Made by a program: the position numbers and the translations under genes
NCBI RefSeq assembly: GCF_011386835.1
Contig: NC_088806.1
Coordinates: 1,612,001-1,676,000 of the forward strand
Reading direction: 5' to 3'
Source: Chrysemys picta bellii
Taxonomy: Eukaryota
Length of the DNA: 64,000 nt
Notes under the pieces: generated by a model
Told to the model about the DNA's origin: nothing
Databases searched by the model: none
The model's input: only the letters and a program-made list of their open reading frames with translations
Part shown: positions 4,721 through 13,700 of the stretch, in pieces
Numbering within the stretch: the first letter of the stretch is position 1
How the letters are laid out: each line of letters opens with the position of its first letter

Positions 4721-7700
4721 TCAGCACTCTGGAAGGGAGAGTCGAGAAAGGATCGATCCTGTATTAATGCCCCTGGTTGCAGCCACTTCTGGGGTGGGGC
4801 GGCTGGTTACATGGGGACCCCTCGCCTGGCACTGAGATGTGGCCACCTCTGGGGCGAGGCGGCCGGTTACCCAGGGACCCCTCGCCCGGTGCTGAGATGC
4901 AGCCACCTCTGGGGCGGGGCGGCCAGTTACCCAGGGACCCCTCGCCCGGTGCTGAGATGCGCCCACCTCTGGGGCAGCTGGTTAGCCAGGGACCCCTCGC
5001 CAGGCAGGAAGAAAGGAACAAAACAGCTGGAAAAGAAAAGGGGAAATAATAAACCTTTCCAGCCAGTTTCTCTCCGTTTTCTTTCCCCCGTTCAGAGTGA
5101 AGGAAGCAGGCCTAGAACCGCGGGCAATGTTGGATGGGGGGGGGGGGCAGGGGGAGCGTTTCGAGGGAATCCCACAGAAAAATAGAGGTTTCTAAGGGGG
5201 AACATCTCCACGTACAGTAAGAAGAGTCCGTTTCTAGTGCAAAGCCCCAACAGTGGTGTGAGTACGTATCAAATTATTCGGGGAACGATTCACATGCCCA
5301 CTGGCGAGGGGCAGCGACACGCCAACACCCCCCAAGGAGACGGTTTCTAAGGGGTGACCCGCACAAAAAAAGAGGCAGTTTCTAGAATGGATATTGCTCA
5401 GGCAACAAAGCCTGCTTCTAACCTTCCCCCACCGTTCATAGTTAAAATAAACACCTGCATTTTGAAGGGGAAAATCTTTCCCCCGTCCCCAGAAAGGCAG
5501 TTTCTAAAAGGGAAAATCCCTGGCCTCCAAAAAAATAGTTTTTAAGGGGGAGAACTGCAGCAGTTTCTAAAGGGGACCCCCGGCCAATTAAAAAAAAAAA
5601 ACGGTTTCTAATAGGGGACCCCCCCACAGCTGTCTCCACAGGGGAGAAACCCTTAGCCAAAGCAAGAAAACGCGGTTTCTAAAGGGGACCGTACACCCCG
5701 GGAAGGCAGTTTCAAGCAAGCGCCAGGAGGTTCTGCCTTCGCCGACCGCACAGAAACAGCTGAGTTGGCCCTGGAAGATGGGGGACAAACCCCAACCCCA
5801 AGTCTTTTTGGTAAAGAAACAAGGCAGCTGCAGGCCCCCTAAGGGCAGCTTAAAGCCATGGGGCTTTTGAAACCGCCGTGAACTCATCTCCACTGTGTTT
5901 ACAAAGCCTTTGTTTCTTCTTCGAGTGCTTGCTCATATCCATTCCATTAGGTGTGTGCGCGCCGCGTGCACGATCGTCGGAAGATTTTTACCCTAGCAAC
6001 ACCGGCGGGTCGGCTGTGGAGCCCCCTAGAGTGGCGCCTTCATGGCGCTGAATATATACCCCAGCCGACCCGGCGCCCCCTCAGTTCCTTCTTACCGCCC
6101 CTGACGGTCGTTGGAACTGTGGAGCGCTGCTTAGCTGTTCTCCACTTTCCCTAGCTTTATTGTTGTATCATAGTTGTAGTTATAGTTATAGTCTTAGAGT
6201 TTGTTGTAAGTTAGTTAAGTAGTTGTAAAGTTGTTCTAAATAGTCCAGGGGGTTAAGGGGGTCGTCTCCCCCCTTTCTCCCCCGGCCGCGGGGCCGGGCT
6301 CATGCCCAACGCTCCCGGCTTCAAGCTGTGCGCCTCCTGCGCTAAACCTATGCCCACGAGCGACCCGCACGAATCTTGTCTGAAGTGCCTGGGAGAGTCA
6401 CACCAGACAGACAAGTGTAAAATCTGTAAGGCCTTTCGTCCGAGAACGAAGAAGGAGCGGGACTTTCGGCTCAGGCAACTTCTGATGGAGGCGGCTCTTA
6501 GCCCGGACGCTCCTTCCACGAGCAAGGCCCCGGCACCTAGCACCTCGGTGCGCAGTGCCCCGGCGGCACCGGCTGCGACGACCACGCGAGTGGCGTCAGA
6601 CAAGCCTCCCCGGCACCGGACCTCGTCGGCACCGCAGACACAGCAAGTGCCTCGGCGCCGGTCCTTATCCCCAGGGCATAAAAAAGCCCATAAGACGGGG
6701 ACATCAGTGCCGAAGACGCCAGCTCCCCCAGTGTCGGGGGTAGAGCCGCGTCCACCGGTGGAGCAACGGAAACAGTTGCCTCCGGCACCGTCGACTCCGG
6801 CGCCGAGGCCGTTGAGTCCGGTGCAAATAGCGTCTCCCCCCAGGCCGGCGGTGATACAGTGCCTCCCGTCGACTCCAGAGACCTTCGCGGCGGCGAGAGA
6901 CTTAATAGCTCTCACGGAGCCGGCACCGCCTCAGCCACCGGCACCGACTGCACCGTTGACTCGCCCGGTCCAGTCGAGGGGGAAACCTGCTTTGATGCGC
7001 CCACCATCACAGGGGCTGGAACCTCGGCACCGGTCCAGGTCCCGAAGCAGGTCCCCACGCCGCTCGCAGTCCCGGCGCCGAATATCGTCTCGGCACCGGT
7101 CGTACTCGCGGCCAAGATCTACTTCGCGGCACCGCTCTACGTCTCGGCACCGCTATGATCGTCGGCACCGATCAACGTCGAGACGTAGTTCTCGGCACCG
7201 CTACGGTCGGCGCTCGACGTCGAGGGGTCGCTCCCGGCACCGGGCATACTCCAGGTCCTCGTCGAGGTCCAGATCCGACTCCCGGCACCGACGAGGTCAT
7301 CGGCACCGGTCGCGGTCCCGGCACCGATCGCCGGCACCGCGCGGAGATAGATCATCTCCGGACCGGCACCGTGCGGCACCGCAGCCCACCGGGATGGTTT
7401 CATCTCTCTCGGCACCGCCATGGCCGTCTAGATCGGTGTCTCGCTCCTCGGAGGACTTGTCGAGATCGGCATACCCCCCTCAAGGGCGCGCCGATGAACA
7501 AAATTTCGGCCACTGGCAGGAGATGGCAGAGGACCAATCTCATGGACCATCTCACTGGTCGTTTTGGACCCCGTGGGCATACCACCAAGAACAAGGGGCT
7601 CCAATACCATCGACCTCTCGCTCGGGTCACTCGGTTAGAAGGGCCCCAGAATCCACCATCTCTCGGCCTCCGCCAGGAGGCATGGAGGCTTCGGTGTCCA

Positions 7701-10700
7701 CGCCACCCGACACCAGGGACCCAAGTGCAGGTGATGCCCCGGCCCAAGAGCAAGGGGATCAGGACCCCCCCTTGGATCCGGTACCACCGGAGGCATCCTC
7801 TTCCTCCTCTCCGGACGAGGCAGTGGCGGGCACTTCATGTACGGGTCCCCCTCCGATAGATCTTCGGGCTCACCAGGATCTCCTGCGTAGGATGGCCCGT
7901 AATATGGACCTGCAGGCGGAGGAGATAGTGGAGGTGCACGACCCGATCGTGAACATCCTTGGAGCAGATGCCCCATCGAGGGTGGCGTTACCTCTGATCC
8001 GCACGATCCAATCGAATGCGGATACGATATGGCAAACTCCTGCCTCCATTCCACCCACAGCGAGAGGGGTGGAAAGAAAATACTTTGTCCCCTCTAAGGA
8101 CTATGGGTACTTGTACACCCACCCCCAACCGTGCTCACTGGTGGTGGAATCAGTGAATGCACGAGAGCGCCACGGCCAGCAGGCTGCAGCGCCTAAATCA
8201 AAAGAGGCTAAGCGGCTCGACCTGTTTGGCCGTAAGGTCTACTCAGCCGGAGGGCTACAACTGAGAGCGGCGAACCAACAGGCGTTACTGAGCCGCTACA
8301 ATTTCAACTCCTGGAACTCTATGGGGAAGTTTAAGGAGTTGATTCCCCAAGAGTCCAGGGAAGAGTTTGGAGCCATGGTAGAGGAGGGCAAGAAGGTGGC
8401 TCGGACCTCCTTGCAGGCCTCCTTGGACATTGCAGACTCAGCGGCGAGGACCCTGGCTTCGGGCATCGCTATGCGCAGGATCTCCTGGCTTCAGGTTTCG
8501 GGTTTGCCTCCGGAGCTGCAGCAAACCCTACAAGATCTGCCTTTTGAGGGGCATGGATTGTTCTCGGATAAGACGGATTCCCGCCTGCAGAGCCTCAAGG
8601 ACTCGAGAACAATCATGCGCTCCCTGGGGATGCATGTTGTGGGCCCCCAGCGCAGGCCATTTAGGCCGCAACCTCAGCGCTTCTACCCCCCCCCCGCCTC
8701 GTCAGAGACAAGACTCGGCCCGGAGGCGAGGGCGAGGTGGTAGAAGAAGGTGGACCGGCCCTCAACCCGGCCAGAACCAGGGGCCACCTCGACCACCTTC
8801 AGGCCCCAGGCAGAACTTTTGAAGGTGCGGTCGAGGACGGCGCCCCAGTCATCCCCCAGGATCCAGCCCCCTCCTTTCGGGATCGCCTCTCCCACTTCCA
8901 CCGTGCTTGGTCCCTTATAACTTCGGACCGTTGGGTCCTCCGCACGGTGGAGAGGGGATACGCTATCCAGTTTTCTTCTATCCCCCCCTCCTCCCCCCCT
9001 TCCCCGTCCCTCTTCAGGGACCCTTCTCACGAGCAACTTCTTATACAGGAAGTTTCTACGCTCCTCGCTATGGGGGCCATAGAGGAGGTTCCAGTGGAAT
9101 TAAGGGGCAGGGGATTCTACTCCCGTTATTTCCTCATCCCCAAGTCCAAAGGAGGTCTGCGACCCATCTTGGACTTGCGCGGACTCAACAAATTCGTAGT
9201 AAAGTTGAAGTTCCGCATGGTCTCTCTGGGGGCCATTATCCCTTCCCTCGATCCTGGAGACTGGTTCGCCGCCCTCGACATGAAAGACGCATACTTTCAC
9301 ATTGCTATTTACACGCCTCACAGACGCTTCCTGCGATTCGTGGTAAACAGGGTGCACTACCAATTTGCAGTCCTTCCCTTCGGCCTATCCTCGGCCCCAC
9401 GGGTGTTCACGAAATGTATGGCTGTCGTGGCAGCGTACCTTCGTCGGCAAGGGATACAGGTGTTCCCGTACCTAGACGACTGGCTGGTACGCGGTCGCAC
9501 CAAAGAACAAGTTCGCGATCACGTCCACATAATAGTGCGCACATTCAACAAGTTGGGTATCCTACTCAACAAGGACAAATCCACTCTAGAACCTACCCAG
9601 AGAATAGAATTCATCGGTGCGGTTCTAGACTCCAGACGCGCACAAGCCATCCTGCCAGACAATCGCTTTTGCACCATCACGAGCCTCATCCAAGGACTCA
9701 AGGCCTTCCCAACTACCACGGTGAGGTCATGCCTTACCCTGCTGGGTCACATGGCTTCCTGCACGTACGTAACCAGGCATGCCAGACTTCGGCTTCGCCC
9801 ACTCCAGACCTGGGTGTCATCAATATACCGCCCACATCGGGACAGCCTGAATATGGTGGTCACAATCCCGAACTCGGTCCTGACCTCCCTCACATGGTGG
9901 CTAGATCACAATGTGGTTTGCGAGGGGATGCCGTTTCACGCCCCACAACCCTCTCTGCACCTGGTCACAGACGCTTCATCTCTGGGTTGGGGCGCCCATC
10001 TCAACGAGCACCATACCCAGGGCCTGTGGACTGCACCTCAGCTAGCCCTACACATCAATGTTCGGGAACTGATGGCGGTGCGCCTGGCATGCCAGGCATT
10101 TCTCAATCTCCTACGTGGCCGCTGTGTGTTAGTTCTCACCGACAACACCACGGCCATGTTTTACATCAACAAGCAAGGAGGAGCACGTTCGTCAATTCTA
10201 TGCCAAGAGGCCATTCGCCTGTGGGACTTCTGCATCGCCCACTCAATCCATCTCACGGCATCGTTCCTCCCTGGAGTCCAGAACACTTTAGCGGACCGAC
10301 TCAGCAGGTCCTTTCAAACGCACGAGTGGTCTATCCGTCCGGACATCATACATTCCGTCTTCCAGAAGTGGGGGTTTCCCCAGATAGACCTGTTTGCATC
10401 TCGAGACAACAGGAAGTGCCACGTGTTCTGCTCCCTGCAAGGTCGAGCCCCAGGCTCCCTCTCGGATGCGTTTCTCCTTACCTGGAAAGACCACCTGTTT
10501 TATGCCTTCCCTCCGTTTCCTCTGGTCCACAAGGTACTGCTCAAATTGCGCAGAGACCAGGCACAGGTGATTCTGATCGCTCCAGCGTGGCCGAGACAAC
10601 ATTGGTACACCACGCTGCTGGAACTCTCGGTTCAGACACCGATCCCGCTTCCGTTGTATCCGGATCTCATCACGCAGAACCACGGCCGGCTGCGTCACCC

Positions 10701-13700
10701 CGACCTGCAATCACTCCACCTCACGGCGTGGCTGCTCCATGGTTCACCCAGGCAGAGCAACAGTGTTCACACTCTGTCCAACAGATTCTGCTGAGCAGTA
10801 GGAAGCCTTCAACACGGACCACATACTTGGCCAAGTGGAAGCGGTTCTCCTGTTGGTGCGAGCAACGAGCCACGTCCCCATTGCACGCACCTATTCCTCT
10901 TATTTTGGAATATCTCCTCTCCCTAAAACAGCAGGGGTTGGCGATATCTTCAATTAGAGTTCACCTGGCCGCTATATCGGCCTTCCATCCAGGGGAACTC
11001 GCGTCCTCGGTATTCTCTAACCCGATGGTCGTTAGATTCCTCAAGGGCTTAGACCGGATGTACCCACAACAACGTCAGCCCGTTCCGACGTGGGACCTCA
11101 ACCTGGTTCTCTCCAAGCTCACAGGTCCTCCATTCGAGCCACTGGCCACCTGTTCACTTCTGTACCTATCCTGGAAGACAGCCTTCCTCGTAGCCATCAC
11201 CTCAGCAAGGCGCGTTTCTGAACTCAGGGCGCTTACATCCGAGCCCCCTTACACAGTTTTCCATAAGGATAAAGTGCAGCTTCGTCCACATCCTGCCTTT
11301 CTCCCTAAGGTGGTTTCTCCATTTCATATCAACCAGGATATATTTCTCCCGGTCTTTCACCCTAAACCACATGCTTCTCGCCAGGATCAACGTTTGCATT
11401 CTCTGGACGTACGCAGGGCCCTGGCCTTCTATATTGACCGCACAAGGCCCTTTAGAAAGACGACGCAACTCTTCGTTGCAGTGGCCGACCGAATGAAAGG
11501 CTCACCGGTCTCATCACAACGCCTATCCTCCTGGATCACGTCTTGCATCCGGACTTGCTACGACCTGGCAGGTGTCTCAGCACCCCACCTCACCGCTCAC
11601 TCCACGAGGGCACAAGCTTCCTCGGCGGCTTTCCTGGCGCAAGTTCCGATCCAGGACATTTGTAGAGCTGCGGTTTGGTCGTCAGTCCACACGTTTACAG
11701 AACACTATGCACTAGTGCAGCAGTCCAGGGACGATGCTGCCTTTGGATCAGCGGTTTTGCACACAGCAATGTCTCACTCCGACCCCACCACCTAAGTTGG
11801 GCTTGGGAGTCACCTAATGGAATGGATATGAGCAAGCACTCGAAGAAGAAAAGACGGTTACTCACCGTTGTAACTGTTGTTCTTCGAGATGTGTTGCTCA
11901 TATCCATTCCAAACCCGCCCTCCGTCCCCACTGTCGGAGTAGCCGGCAAGAAGGAACTGAGGGGGCGCCGGGTCGGCTGGGGTATATATTCAGCGCCATG
12001 AAGGCGCCACTCTAGGGGGCTCCACAGCCGACCCGCCGGTGTTGCTAGGGTAAAAATCTTCCGACGATCGTGCACGCGGCGCGCACACACCTAATGGAAT
12101 GGATATGAGCAACACATCTCGAAGAACAACAGTTACAACGGTGAGTAACCGTCTTTTTTGTAGAGTCGCCCCACACCCTTGGGTCGTTGAGAAGCCACCA
12201 TCCGCAGTCCCAGCCCCACTCTGTGTTTACGTAGGGTAGCCCTCAACCTCCCCCCGCCAGCTCTTGCCAGACTTTCGAGCGCTGTTTACAAGCAGGGGTA
12301 TTTTTGTAGGGTAGCTTACAAAACAAACACCTTGCGGATGTTAGTAAACAAAGGGGAAGGTTTCTGGCTACCCTGCAAAAAGAAGCTCTTTGGAAAACCA
12401 TGACCACAGCCCCCCGCCCCGAACCTGCGTCCCCCTGACCCCGTGACCCCCAGATCCGCCCCGTACCTGGCCCGTCCCTTCCGCCCCGTCGTCCCTGCAG
12501 CTCCTGGGAGCGGTGGAAGTCGATGCTGGCGTAGGCCTGGGGGCTGGGGCCACCGGCCGCCCGGGGGCTCCCATCCGGGCCGCCTCCTCCCCGGGCCAGG
12601 TCCAGGGCAACGTAGTTGAGTCCCGGCTCCTCCCAGGCGGGGATGCCCCGCTCCCTGCAGCGCCGCCTGCCGGGCTCCGCCCTCGCCGGCTGGCCCGGGC
12701 CGGGCCGGTATTCGATGCTGACGTACTCCCCGGGGCTCAGGGACACCGGCTCCTCCAAGCTCTCACTGCTGGTGGAGGAGGAGCAGGAGGAGAGGCGCCC
12801 GGGCACGGCCAGCTGGGCCCCGTGCTTGTAGGTGCGCGGCAGGGAGCGGAAGGGGCAGGGGGCCTCCCCGGGGGCGCCGGGCGGGGGGCTGCGGCGCAGG
12901 GGGGTGCTGCTGGCCGAGCGCCACAGCGGGGACATGTTCACGTACTCGGGCGCCCAGCTCCCGCTGGGGGACATGAGCATGTACCCGGCGGCTTCGCCCC
13001 GGGGCGGAGAGACGCCGCTGGGGCTCATGGGCACGTAATCCGGCTGCCCCGCGCCCGGCAGGGCTGCCCCGGGCAGCATGGCCATGTAGCCGGACTCTGG
13101 GCACCACCCTGGCTTCCTCCGCCCGGCGCCTGTGCCCAGCGCCAAGGGGGGCAGCGACGGCCGCTTGCAGCTGGGCGCCCGCCCCTCCGGGGAGCCTGCC
13201 GGCTCTGGGCTGCCCGTCGGGCGCCCCTCTCCGGGGCTGGAGGATCCGCCCTCGTCCGACGACGCCAGGGCGTAGTCCCCGTCGGGCAGGCGGCGCCCGG
13301 AGCCCGGCAGCTGGGCAGGGGGCAGGCGCCGGGCCGGCACCGAGATGGGGGCGGAGGCCTGGCCGCGGCCTCGCACCCGGCACTCCTCACTCAGCCGCTT
13401 CATGGCCTCCAGGATGGTTTCGTGGATGTGCCGGGCCACCACCAGGTCCTCCACCTGCATCCACAGCTCGCCGGGGCCCGTGGCGGCCGAGCGCCCCACC
13501 TCCAGGAAGAAGTAGTTCTCCGAATGGCCGCAACGCCGGACACTCAGCAGCTGCAGCAGTAGGCAGGGGGCCGGGGCGCCGAGCTGCACCAGCTCCACCG
13601 TGCTCTCCGCCAGGCACAGCCGGTGCACGCCCACCAGGTTCCTGGCCTGCCCCAGCCCCTTGGGGCGCAGGCTCACCTGCCACACCTCCCGGAAGGGCCA

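What the first reader, a model, noticed from the sequence alone, without database searches (positions are those of the whole stretch)
8811..10794. One UUU-UGA stop as a three-way translational switch: Gag, Gag-YR (readthrough), Gag-Pol (+1 shift)
Seen: the corrected gag frame ends CAG AAC TTT TGA (8811-8822). The same frame is then open for 990 codons to the end of the recombinase (8823-11795). The +1 frame reads TTT GAA GGT... directly into RT/RH/MT, which has no ATG until ~9069, close to the start of the RT core. Nearly 2 kb is therefore dual-coding with no stop in either frame. Established: +1 frameshifts occur at a slippery P-site codon before UGA (prfB CUU-UGA, antizyme UCC-UGA), and DIRS ORFs are known to overlap. 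Inference: termination, readthrough and +1 slippage at this one site could set the stoichiometry of all three proteins. I do not know of this being demonstrated for vertebrate DIRS.
Basis: partly seen in the sequence, partly recalled or inferred. Interest (0 to 1): 0.8.

Follow-up and report, generated by a model that had tools for sequence, protein, structure and literature searches.

The report
Conserved gag-stop recoding site in DIRS
A turtle DIRS1-like retrotransposon ends its gag gene at a deeply conserved NUU-UGA site where pol continues in the +1 frame and the recombinase frame continues in frame without a stop for about 990 codons, so one stop codon probably feeds all three proteins, although this copy is itself out of frame and no translation data exist.

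Summary
The window holds one complete DIRS1-like retrotransposon (5913-12157) of a turtle, close to Chrysemys picta.

**Observation: mostly right.**
- CAG AAC TTT TGA is at 8811-8822.
- The same frame is then open for 990 codons, to the recombinase stop at 11795.
- The +1 frame reads FEGAVEDG... into RT/RNase H/MT and ends at 10794.
- This copy's own gag (ATG 6302 to TAG 8743) is in a different frame. The frame changes at a C10 run (8686-8695) whose length varies among copies.

**Interpretation: partly supported by comparison, untested by experiment.**
- Nine loci from eight other turtle, lizard and metagenome sources keep an invariant TTTGA at the gag stop (TTT, GTT or CTT, then TGA).
- In all of them pol starts in the +1 frame, and seven of nine have no upstream ATG in that frame.
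- In four lineages with only 45-67% pol identity, the gag frame has 0 stops across about 640 overlapping codons. Synonymous shuffles expect 12-21 (0 of 5000 shuffles each).
- That overlapping product is not conserved as a protein; it is only kept open.
- A gecko lineage instead has pol in frame after TGA-CTA and lacks the long overlap.

**Weak points.**
- The base after UGA is usually A or U, a poor readthrough context.
- No supported 3' RNA structure was found.
- There is no ribosome or peptide evidence.

The long pol/recombinase overlap itself is already published.

The parts
5913..6097 (+). Left inverted terminal repeat of the DIRS1-like element
   Evidence: Self-BLAST: 5914-6097 matches 12129-11944 inverted at 97.3%.
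6302..8743 (+). gag ORF as it stands in this copy (813 aa, frame mod 3 = 2). It ends at TAG 8741-8743 with the aberrant tail ASSETRLGPEARARW.
   Evidence: Homologues are turtle DIRS gag proteins. No Pfam hit for this copy; relatives give weak LAP2alpha hits.
8686..8695 (+). C10 homopolymer where this copy's gag leaves the frame that leads to TTT TGA. Its length is hypervariable among copies.
   Evidence: Other C. picta copies read ARARW*, or ...QNF*, or run straight into pol, depending on run length. L006 has C13. Contigs with one or two letters fewer are seen in several runs (table 4).
8697..8819 (+). Ancestral gag tail in frame mod 3 = 0 (PRQRQDSARRRGRGGRRRWTGPQPGQNQGPPRPPSGPRQNF), overlapped by the open upstream part of the pol frame (8665 onward)
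   Evidence: Matches the tails of P0183, P0187 and P0002. The three differences from L006 in this stretch are all synonymous in this frame (read).
8817..8823 (+). Proposed recoding site TTT TGA A. The TTTGA core (8818-8822) is invariant in all nine junctions.
8818..10794 (+). pol (RT / RNase H / methyltransferase) in the +1 frame: 658 codons from the junction to the stop TGA 10792-10794
   Evidence: Pfam RVT_1 1.3e-21, RT_RNaseH 3e-4, Dam 8e-3. First ATG at codon 85.
8823..10794 (+). Overlapping, stop-free continuation of the gag frame. It encodes a P/S/G/R-rich product of about 657 aa that is not conserved as a protein.
   Evidence: 0 stops against 16.8 expected. Substitutions follow the pol codon positions. 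Identity between lineages is 22-35%.
10797..11795 (+). Tyrosine recombinase domain, the non-overlapping 3' part of the gag-frame ORF
   Evidence: Weak Phage_integrase hit at residues 866-966 of the 990-aa ORF. 47-51% identical to the L003 and L010 recombinases.
11811..11911 (+). Internal complementary region. 11811-11851 is complementary to the left end and 11849-11911 to the right end, with a 3-bp overlap.
11944..12157 (+). Right inverted terminal repeat plus right extension

Best explanation
The site is the gag-terminal recoding signal of a deep lineage of DIRS1-like tyrosine-recombinase retrotransposons. Its core is N-UUU-GA: the last gag codon is NUU (UUU here), followed by UGA.

Proposed mechanism:
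- Most ribosomes terminate and make Gag.
- While UGA waits in the A site, some P-site tRNAs slip +1 from NUU onto UUU. GAA or GAU is then decoded, giving Gag-Pol (inferred).
- Ribosomes that instead decode UGA stay in the gag frame. They translate about 650 codons of an unconstrained linker laid over pol and reach the recombinase domain, giving Gag-linker-YR (inferred).

What is shown:
- The sequence motif is conserved.
- Pol has no start codon of its own.
- Selection keeps the gag frame stop-free across all of pol in four diverged lineages.

Not shown: any of the three translation outcomes.

The copy in the window cannot run this scheme as it stands. A length change in a hypervariable C run puts its gag in another frame, ending at 8743.
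For: 1. Gag tails of nine turtle families are poorly conserved, yet the terminal Phe is invariant. Of 39 representative gag homologues that reach the end of the profile, 25 end in F, V, I or L, the residues that NUU codons encode.
2. DNA at nine junctions reads TTT TGA (window, L001, L002, L003, L007, L008, L009), GTT TGA (L005) and CTT TGA (L010). TTTGA is the only invariant block in the gag-tail and junction region, before the conserved pol domain starts.
3. The +1 frame reads F-E/D and then the conserved pol N-domain (F.DRLS.F..W..IT.D.WVL). The first pol-frame ATG lies beyond that domain (codons 85-136), and seven of nine loci have no ATG in the open stretch upstream.
4. Stops in the gag frame across pol: 0 observed against 16.8, 20.9, 15.9 and 12.4 expected in the window, L003, L001 and L010, with 0 of 5000 shuffles each. 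The control frame matches expectation.
5. In the window, L003 and L010 the frame is open from the gag UGA to the recombinase stop (990, 977 and 973 codons).
6. The first ATG in that frame is at codon 198, 283, 31 or 190, so it is not conserved.
7. The overlap product is not constrained as a protein: its own third positions vary least. This fits a stretch that only has to be translated through.
8. UUU UGA is a listed +1 shift site (PMC3500957, Table 2), and UUU_U occurs in some prfB genes (PMC5009743).
9. A gecko relative has gag-TGA-CTA-pol in one frame, so stop-codon recoding at the gag end recurs in the superfamily.
Against: - There are no ribosome-profiling, reporter or peptide data.
- The base after UGA is A (six loci), U (two) or C (one), so it is mostly not the readthrough-favouring C or CUAG context.
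- The small hairpin just 3' of UGA in cryptodire families is no better than shuffled controls (65 of 500), is absent in L003 and L005, and fold z-scores are unremarkable. Rfam finds nothing.
- A readthrough product would carry a linker of about 650 aa of apparently arbitrary sequence, which is unusual.
- The gecko lineage must reach the recombinase frame (-1 relative to pol) from within the last 212 pol codons. A second entry route therefore exists and could also serve here.
- In this subfamily some genomic copies are direct gag-pol fusions through C-run length.
- Older DIRS papers that may discuss frames (Goodwin and Poulter 2001, 2004; Poulter and Goodwin 2005) could not be read.
Confidence: 0.5

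Rival explanations
1. Only the +1 frameshift is real. Gag-Pol is made at NUU-UGA, but the recombinase is reached another way: a second shift (-1) out of pol, non-AUG or internal initiation in the overlap, or reinitiation after termination at the gag UGA. It is not reached by decoding the stop.
For: - The recombinase frame is -1 relative to pol both here and in the gecko L004, where it cannot be entered from the gag stop.
- The pol stop abuts the start of the conserved recombinase domain in all lineages.
- The context after UGA is poor for readthrough.
Against: - No X_XXY_YYZ heptamer is conserved in the pol frame. The window has only C runs near 8982-8994.
- Entry late in the overlap would not require about 640 stop-free codons reaching back exactly to the gag stop in four lineages.
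- ATG positions in that frame are not conserved, and 197-282 codons upstream of the first ATG are still open in the window and L003.
Confidence: 0.3
2. There is no ribosomal recoding at the stop. Pol and the recombinase come from RNA or DNA variants: spliced or subgenomic transcripts, or, in this subfamily, length slippage of the C run (by polymerase or reverse transcriptase) that puts gag into the pol frame or the tail frame.
For: - Annotated C. picta copies fall into all three frames after the C run, and three are continuous gag-pol ORFs: P0003, P0188 and P0189.
- Run-length variants appear in DNA and RNA-type runs: one letter fewer in 6.5% of depth in X15, 36% in X6 and 9% in X20.
Against: - The C run is absent from the other families, which keep the same TTTGA junction and open frames.
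- No recurrent splice-like joints appear in the RNA-type runs; the joints listed are single contigs (table 5).
- Splicing would not select for a stop-free overlap.
- An RNA-type contig runs colinearly over 8712-9506 without gaps (table 8).
Confidence: 0.12
3. The double open frame is a chance or compositional by-product of GC-rich sequence in a decaying copy, and the TTT TGA is incidental.
For: The element is GC-rich, and this copy's gag is frame-broken.
Against: - Synonymous shuffles that keep composition and protein never give fewer than 4-7 stops.
- The other alternative frame carries the expected number of stops.
- The pattern recurs in four lineages at 45-67% pol identity.
- Differences between copies are strongly biased to third positions, so the lineages evolved under purifying selection.
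Confidence: 0.02

Closest known systems
DIRS1-like retrotransposons with 'long ORF overlap' (Piednoel et al. 2011, PMC3266345; e.g. AcDIRS2, XtDIRS2/3, TnDIRS)
   Same: - Inverted terminal repeats and an internal complementary region with a 3-bp junction.
- Genes for gag, RT/RH/MT and YR.
- A long pol/YR overlap, with the catalytic recombinase domain in the non-overlapping 3' end.
   Different: That paper records the overlap as present or absent and proposes no way of translating it. Three points are not in the papers I could read:
- the overlap starts exactly at the gag UGA;
- the junction core TTTGA is invariant;
- selection is only for openness.
Stop-codon-dependent +1 frameshifting: bacterial prfB (CUU UGA C) and eukaryotic antizyme (UCC UGA U)
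   Same: A shift-prone P-site codon sits directly before a slowly decoded UGA. L010 carries exactly CUU UGA C, and UUU UGA is a listed +1 site (PMC3500957) that occurs in a minority of prfB genes (PMC5009743).
   Different: - There is no Shine-Dalgarno-type stimulator, which would not apply in eukaryotes.
- No antizyme-like pseudoknot is supported.
- The site serves gag-pol expression, not autoregulation.
- The zero frame also continues as a long coding frame.
Ty1 (CUU AGG C) and Ty3 (GCG AGU U) gag-pol +1 frameshifting
   Same: A retroelement gag-pol fusion is made by a +1 shift at a single heptamer without a large overlap requirement.
   Different: The yeast sites pause on a rare sense codon, not on a stop, and no third reading frame is served.
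Gammaretrovirus (MuLV) gag-pol readthrough; the gecko DIRS lineage L004 (TTC TGA CTA)
   Same: Part of the ribosomes decode an in-frame stop at the end of gag to extend Gag.
   Different: MuLV uses UAG plus a spaced pseudoknot and extends into pol. Here the extension would be a linker plus recombinase, and no stimulator was found. The gecko lineage has the favourable UGA-CUA context that the window lineage lacks.
Arterivirus (PRRSV) nsp2 site giving three products by -2 and -1 shifts at one slippery sequence (from my own knowledge, not checked here)
   Same: One site distributes ribosomes among three outcomes.
   Different: It works by protein-stimulated -2/-1 shifts on a sense-codon site, not by the choice of termination, +1 shift or readthrough at a stop.

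Membership tests
DIRS1-like retrotransposon (order DIRS) | Inverted terminal repeats | tested here: met
   5914-6097 against 11944-12129, inverted, 97.3%.
DIRS1-like retrotransposon (order DIRS) | Internal complementary region matching both termini, with a short circular junction | tested here: met
   11811-11851 is complementary to 5913-5953 and 11849-11911 to 12095-12157, both at 100%, with a 3-bp overlap.
DIRS1-like retrotransposon (order DIRS) | gag, RT/RNase H/methyltransferase and tyrosine recombinase genes | tested here: met
   RVT_1 1.3e-21. RT_RNaseH, Dam and Phage_integrase match below Pfam cut-offs. Gag homologues are turtle and lizard DIRS gag proteins. The recombinase is 47-51% identical to those of L003 and L010.
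DIRS1-like retrotransposon (order DIRS) | Long pol/YR ORF overlap (present in about half of described families) | tested here: met
   8823-10794 is open in both frames.
Programmed +1 ribosomal frameshift site of the stop-dependent type (prfB / antizyme-like) | A P-site codon whose tRNA can re-pair in the +1 frame, directly before a stop codon | tested here: met
   UUU, GUU or CUU followed by UGA. The +1 codon is UUU in nine of nine loci.
Programmed +1 ribosomal frameshift site of the stop-dependent type (prfB / antizyme-like) | Site conserved beyond what the coding sequence requires, across diverged relatives | tested here: met
   TTTGA is invariant while the gag tail and the first 20 or so pol codons vary.
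Programmed +1 ribosomal frameshift site of the stop-dependent type (prfB / antizyme-like) | Downstream ORF lacks its own initiation codon and carries essential domains | tested here: met
   Seven of nine loci have no pol-frame ATG before the conserved N-domain; L010 has one at -7.
Programmed +1 ribosomal frameshift site of the stop-dependent type (prfB / antizyme-like) | Stimulatory element (3' pseudoknot or stem, or a 5' element) | tested here: inconclusive
   An 8-bp hairpin 1-4 nt after UGA in cryptodire families is 84% paired but not above shuffles (65 of 500), and it is absent in L003 and L005. No Rfam match.
Programmed +1 ribosomal frameshift site of the stop-dependent type (prfB / antizyme-like) | Trans-frame protein product demonstrated | not testable with these tools
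   Only contig-level RNA data were available.
Programmed stop-codon readthrough | Leaky stop (UGA) with a long in-frame ORF downstream that is kept open by selection | tested here: met
   UGA in nine of nine loci. 0 stops against 12-21 expected in four lineages.
Programmed stop-codon readthrough | Favourable 3' context (C at +4, CUAG, CARYYA) or a spaced 3' structure | tested here: not met
   The +4 base is A in six loci, U in two and C in one. No supported structure. The gecko L004, with pol in frame, does have UGA-CUA.
Programmed stop-codon readthrough | Protein-level conservation of the extension next to the stop | tested here: not met
   The overlap product is 22-35% identical between lineages, and its third codon positions are the least variable. 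Only the distal recombinase domain is conserved.

The most novel reading that the evidence does not exclude
In a deep lineage of vertebrate DIRS1-like elements (cryptodire, pleurodire and trionychian turtles, a cordylid lizard and, by protein evidence only, perhaps coelacanth), one NUU-UGA codon pair is a three-way switch.
- Termination gives Gag.
- A +1 slip gives Gag-Pol.
- UGA decoding gives Gag fused, through an overprinted spacer of about 650 aa that is free of sequence constraint, to the tyrosine recombinase.

The whole pol gene would then double as a 'translate-through' linker, kept open only so that ribosomes can reach the recombinase.
Probability: 0.4. Interest if true: 0.75.

Novelty: new variant of a known kind. 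Interest (0 to 1): 0.62.

Why it matters
How DIRS elements translate pol and the recombinase from one full-length RNA is not explained in the literature I could search. Reviews only note 'overlapping ORFs', and the large recoding review (PMC5009743) does not mention DIRS in the part held (the first 300,000 of 449,034 characters).

The comparison made here turns that gap into a sharp, cheap test. A cassette of about 200 nt around an invariant TTTGA should give measurable +1 and in-frame signals.

If the model is confirmed, three things would follow:
- It would add a vertebrate example of stop-dependent +1 frameshifting outside antizyme.
- It would be a case where termination, frameshifting and readthrough compete at one codon.
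- It would be an extreme example of an overlapping frame kept open by selection without being conserved as a protein.

The finding also matters for annotation. Turtle gag ORFs are currently named 'serine/arginine repetitive matrix protein 2-like' and are fused into host gene models.

Tried and rejected
- **Chance openness:** rejected by synonymous-codon shuffles.
- **AUG initiation of the recombinase frame:** the first ATG is at codon 198, 283, 31 or 190, so it is not conserved.
- **AUG initiation of pol:** seven of nine loci have no ATG upstream of the conserved N-domain.
- **Classical -1 slippery heptamer from pol into the recombinase frame:** none is conserved.
- **3' stimulatory RNA:**
  - Single-sequence folds give z-scores of -1.7 to +2.0.
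  - The alignment fold gives one 8-bp hairpin, and its pairing is not above controls.
  - Rfam gives nothing relevant.
- **Independent protein constraint on the overlap frame:** not found. Substitutions follow the pol codon positions. Third-position divergence is lower in the 300-nt bin around the junction. That bin includes true gag-tail/pol dual coding and possible recombination between lineages, so I draw nothing from it.
- **Splicing:** the contigs laid on 6200-12100 show no recurrent joints in RNA-type runs. Contigs cannot exclude rare isoforms, and all runs were contigs, so RNA ends, strand and level could not be read.
- **Failed look-ups:** no DNA on record for P0005 (Gopherus) or P0144 (Latimeria). 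Goodwin and Poulter 2001 is not held.
- **Literature:** searches for DIRS with frameshift or readthrough found no paper that proposes a mechanism.
- **Earlier scan notes on DIRS in this genome** concern insertions and termini, not translation.

Full report
**What is in the window.**
Self-comparison shows one complete DIRS1-like element at about 5913-12157.
- Inverted terminal repeats lie at 5914-6097 and 11944-12129 and are 97.3% identical.
- An internal complementary region at 11811-11911 has two halves that are perfectly complementary to the two termini and overlap by 3 bp.
- Pfam finds RVT_1 (1.3e-21), with sub-threshold RT_RNaseH and Dam matches, in the frame-1 ORF. It finds a weak Phage_integrase match at the 3' end of the frame-0 ORF.
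- Gag homologues are all from turtles, and the nearest (99%) is from Chrysemys picta bellii.

**Checking the observation.**
- CAG AAC TTT TGA is at 8811-8822.
- The same frame (position mod 3 = 0) is open from 8823 to the stop ending at 11795, which is 990 codons. Only the last 330 or so encode the recombinase domain.
- The +1 frame is open from 8665 to the TGA at 10792-10794. From 8818 it reads FEGAVEDGAPV... into RT/RH/MT.
- Its first ATG after the junction is at codon 85, about 9070.
- So 1972 nt are stop-free in two frames.
- Synonymous-codon shuffles of pol predict 16.8-17.3 stops in the recombinase frame, and none is seen after the UGA (0 of 20000 and 0 of 5000 shuffles). The other alternative frame has 26 stops against 28.6 expected.

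One part of the observation does not hold for this copy. Its gag ORF (ATG 6302) is in frame 2 and stops at TAG 8741-8743 with the tail ...FYPPPASSETRLGPEARARW. It never reaches TTT TGA. The frames part at a C10 run at 8686-8695.

Yes, by comparison with other copies and families.
- Gag proteins of many turtle DIRS families (53-95% identical) end ...QNF...PSF...PGF...PDF...QEF...GQF...PAF or ...QAF.
- In a nine-sequence alignment the tail is poorly conserved, but the terminal Phe is invariant.
- Within the young C. picta subfamily the C run is hypervariable:
  - some annotated copies read ARARW* like the window (P0001, P0184-P0186);
  - some read ...RQRQDSARRRGRGGRRRWTGPQPGQNQGPPRPPSGPRQNF* (P0183, P0187, P0002);
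  - three are continuous gag-pol ORFs in the pol frame (P0003, P0188, P0189).
- Contigs with one or two fewer letters at 8686 occur in several runs. In X15, a DNA run, the version with one letter fewer holds 6.5% of the depth.
- The three differences between the window and L006 in 8697-8819 are all synonymous in frame 0 (read). Frame 0 is therefore the frame under selection there.

**Conservation of the site.**
I fetched DNA for nine other loci.

| Junction | Loci |
|---|---|
| TTT TGA AGG | window; L007 (C. picta); L008 (Macrochelys); L009 (Gopherus) |
| TTT TGA AGC | L001 (a second C. picta family) |
| TTT TGA TGG | L002 (Emydura) |
| TTT TGA TTA | L003 (the lizard Hemicordylus) |
| GTT TGA AGG | L005 (Carettochelys) |
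| CTT TGA CTC | L010 (a metagenome contig, host unknown) |

- In the eight-sequence alignment, TTTGA is the only invariant block in the gag-tail and junction region, before the conserved pol domain begins.
- In every case the +1 frame reads F-E/D. After about 20 variable residues comes the conserved pol N-domain, F.DRLS.F..W..IT.D.WVL..V..GY.
- Of 39 representative gag homologues that reach the end of the profile, 12 end in F, 9 in V, 2 in I and 2 in L. These are the residues with NUU codons.
- The V-ending group is trionychian turtles. Latimeria gag copies also end in V, but I have no DNA for them.

**The open gag frame.**
- In the window, L003 and L010 the gag frame continues from the UGA to the recombinase stop without a single stop (990, 977 and 973 codons).
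- In L001 it is open for 673 codons, past the end of pol.
- Shuffle tests give 0 observed against 16.8, 20.9, 15.9 and 12.4 expected, with 0 of 5000 shuffles each. The control frame is as expected.
- These four lineages share only 45-67% pol identity. The overlap products are 22-35% identical and rich in P, S, G and R.
- Between copies, substitutions in the overlap follow the pol codon positions. The overlap frame's own third position varies least.
- The overlap frame is therefore kept open but is not conserved as a protein.
- Its first ATG is at codon 198, 283, 31 or 190, so it is not conserved.
- No classical -1 heptamer is conserved in the pol frame.
- The simplest reading is that ribosomes enter this frame at its 5' end, which is the gag stop.

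**A contrasting lineage.**
- In the gecko Eublepharis (L004), gag ends GTC TTC TGA CTA and pol follows in the same frame. This is a readthrough arrangement with the favourable UGA-CUA context.
- There the recombinase frame carries 19 stops across pol and is open only over the last 212 pol codons.
- This shows that recoding at the gag stop recurs in the superfamily, and that the long overlap goes with pol being in +1.
- It also shows that the recombinase frame can be reached by some other route.

**Mechanism proposed.**
- **Established knowledge.** +1 shifts occur when a shift-prone codon sits in the P site and a stop codon is slowly decoded in the A site, as in prfB (CUU UGA C) and antizyme (UCC UGA U). 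UUU UGA is listed among +1 sites (PMC3500957, Table 2). UUU_U occurs in a minority of prfB genes (PMC5009743).
- **Inference for this site.** tRNA-Phe (or Val or Leu) slips from NUU to UUU, GAA or GAU is read next, and Gag-Pol results.
- **Further inference.** Ribosomes that decode UGA continue in the gag frame to the recombinase.
- **My odds.** About 0.7 for the +1 step, about 0.4-0.5 for readthrough, and 0.5 for the statement as a whole.

**Weak points.**
- The base after UGA is A in six loci, U in two and C in one.
- The only candidate 3' structure is an 8-bp hairpin just after UGA in cryptodire families. It is not better than controls and is missing in L003 and L005.
- Rfam finds nothing.
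- The RNA evidence consists of contigs only. They show that the region is present and colinear in RNA-type runs and show no recurrent splice joints, but they cannot exclude rare isoforms.

**What is known.**
- The long pol/YR overlap, with the catalytic domain in the non-overlapping 3' end, is described for about half of 28 DIRS1-like elements, including Anolis, Xenopus and Tetraodon (PMC3266345).
- Reviews of Dictyostelium DIRS-1 and the Xenopus survey only say that the ORFs overlap.
- Full-text searches found no paper that proposes a frameshift or readthrough mechanism for DIRS.
- The large recoding review does not mention DIRS or UUU UGA in the part held.
- The early Goodwin and Poulter papers are not held, so an earlier remark on frames cannot be excluded.

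**Verdict.**
Deep conservation strengthens it, and the +1 half is better supported than the readthrough half.
- It is a new variant of known recoding mechanisms rather than a new kind.

Noticed in passing
window 8686-8695; proteins P0001, P0003, P0183-P0189; L006 about 8380-8400: The poly-C run near the end of gag differs in length among young C. picta copies and spreads them over all three frames: a short gag tail, the full gag tail, or a continuous gag-pol ORF. The run is absent from other families. It may reflect slippage by reverse transcriptase or polymerase at each cycle.
   Followed up: partly
L004 10300-13236 (Eublepharis macularius): A gecko DIRS lineage has gag and pol in one frame separated by TGA CTA, the classical leaky context. 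Its recombinase ORF overlaps only the last 212 pol codons, in the -1 frame.
   Followed up: partly
L010 2240-2255 (ENA assembly ERZ27259973, contig k141_35284): An apparently intact 5.6-kb DIRS element on a metagenome contig of unknown host has CTT TGA C at the gag stop, the same heptamer as the bacterial prfB shift site. Its nearest named gag relatives are from the lizard Phrynocephalus, at 37% identity.
   Followed up: partly
window 6302-11795 against L006 and L007: Differences between copies are strongly biased to third positions (for example 15/7/84 in gag against L006), so copies descend from lineages that evolved under purifying selection. L007 is far more diverged in gag (third positions 36%) than in pol and YR (15-17%), which suggests recombination between DIRS lineages.
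   Followed up: partly
proteins P0001, P0005, P0007, P0010, P0012, P0014, P0022-P0025 and others: Public annotations name DIRS gag ORFs 'serine/arginine repetitive matrix protein 2-like'. They also fuse gag or pol pieces into host gene models such as Semaphorin-5A, BMPR1A, NOS3 and NEDD4 in Chelonia mydas.
   Followed up: no
window 6302-7600: The N-terminal half of gag starts with a Cys/His-rich motif (CASCAKPMPTSDPHESCLKCLGESHQTDKCKIC), followed by a long Arg/Ser-rich low-complexity region. No Pfam family matches.
   Followed up: no
window 8700-9000: Third-position divergence from other families is lower here (0.32-0.35 against L008 and L009; 0.49 on 39 sites against L001) than in neighbouring bins (0.4-0.6). 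The bin spans the gag-tail/pol overlap and the junction. It could reflect dual coding or an RNA element.
   Followed up: partly
I did not examine this.
   Followed up: no
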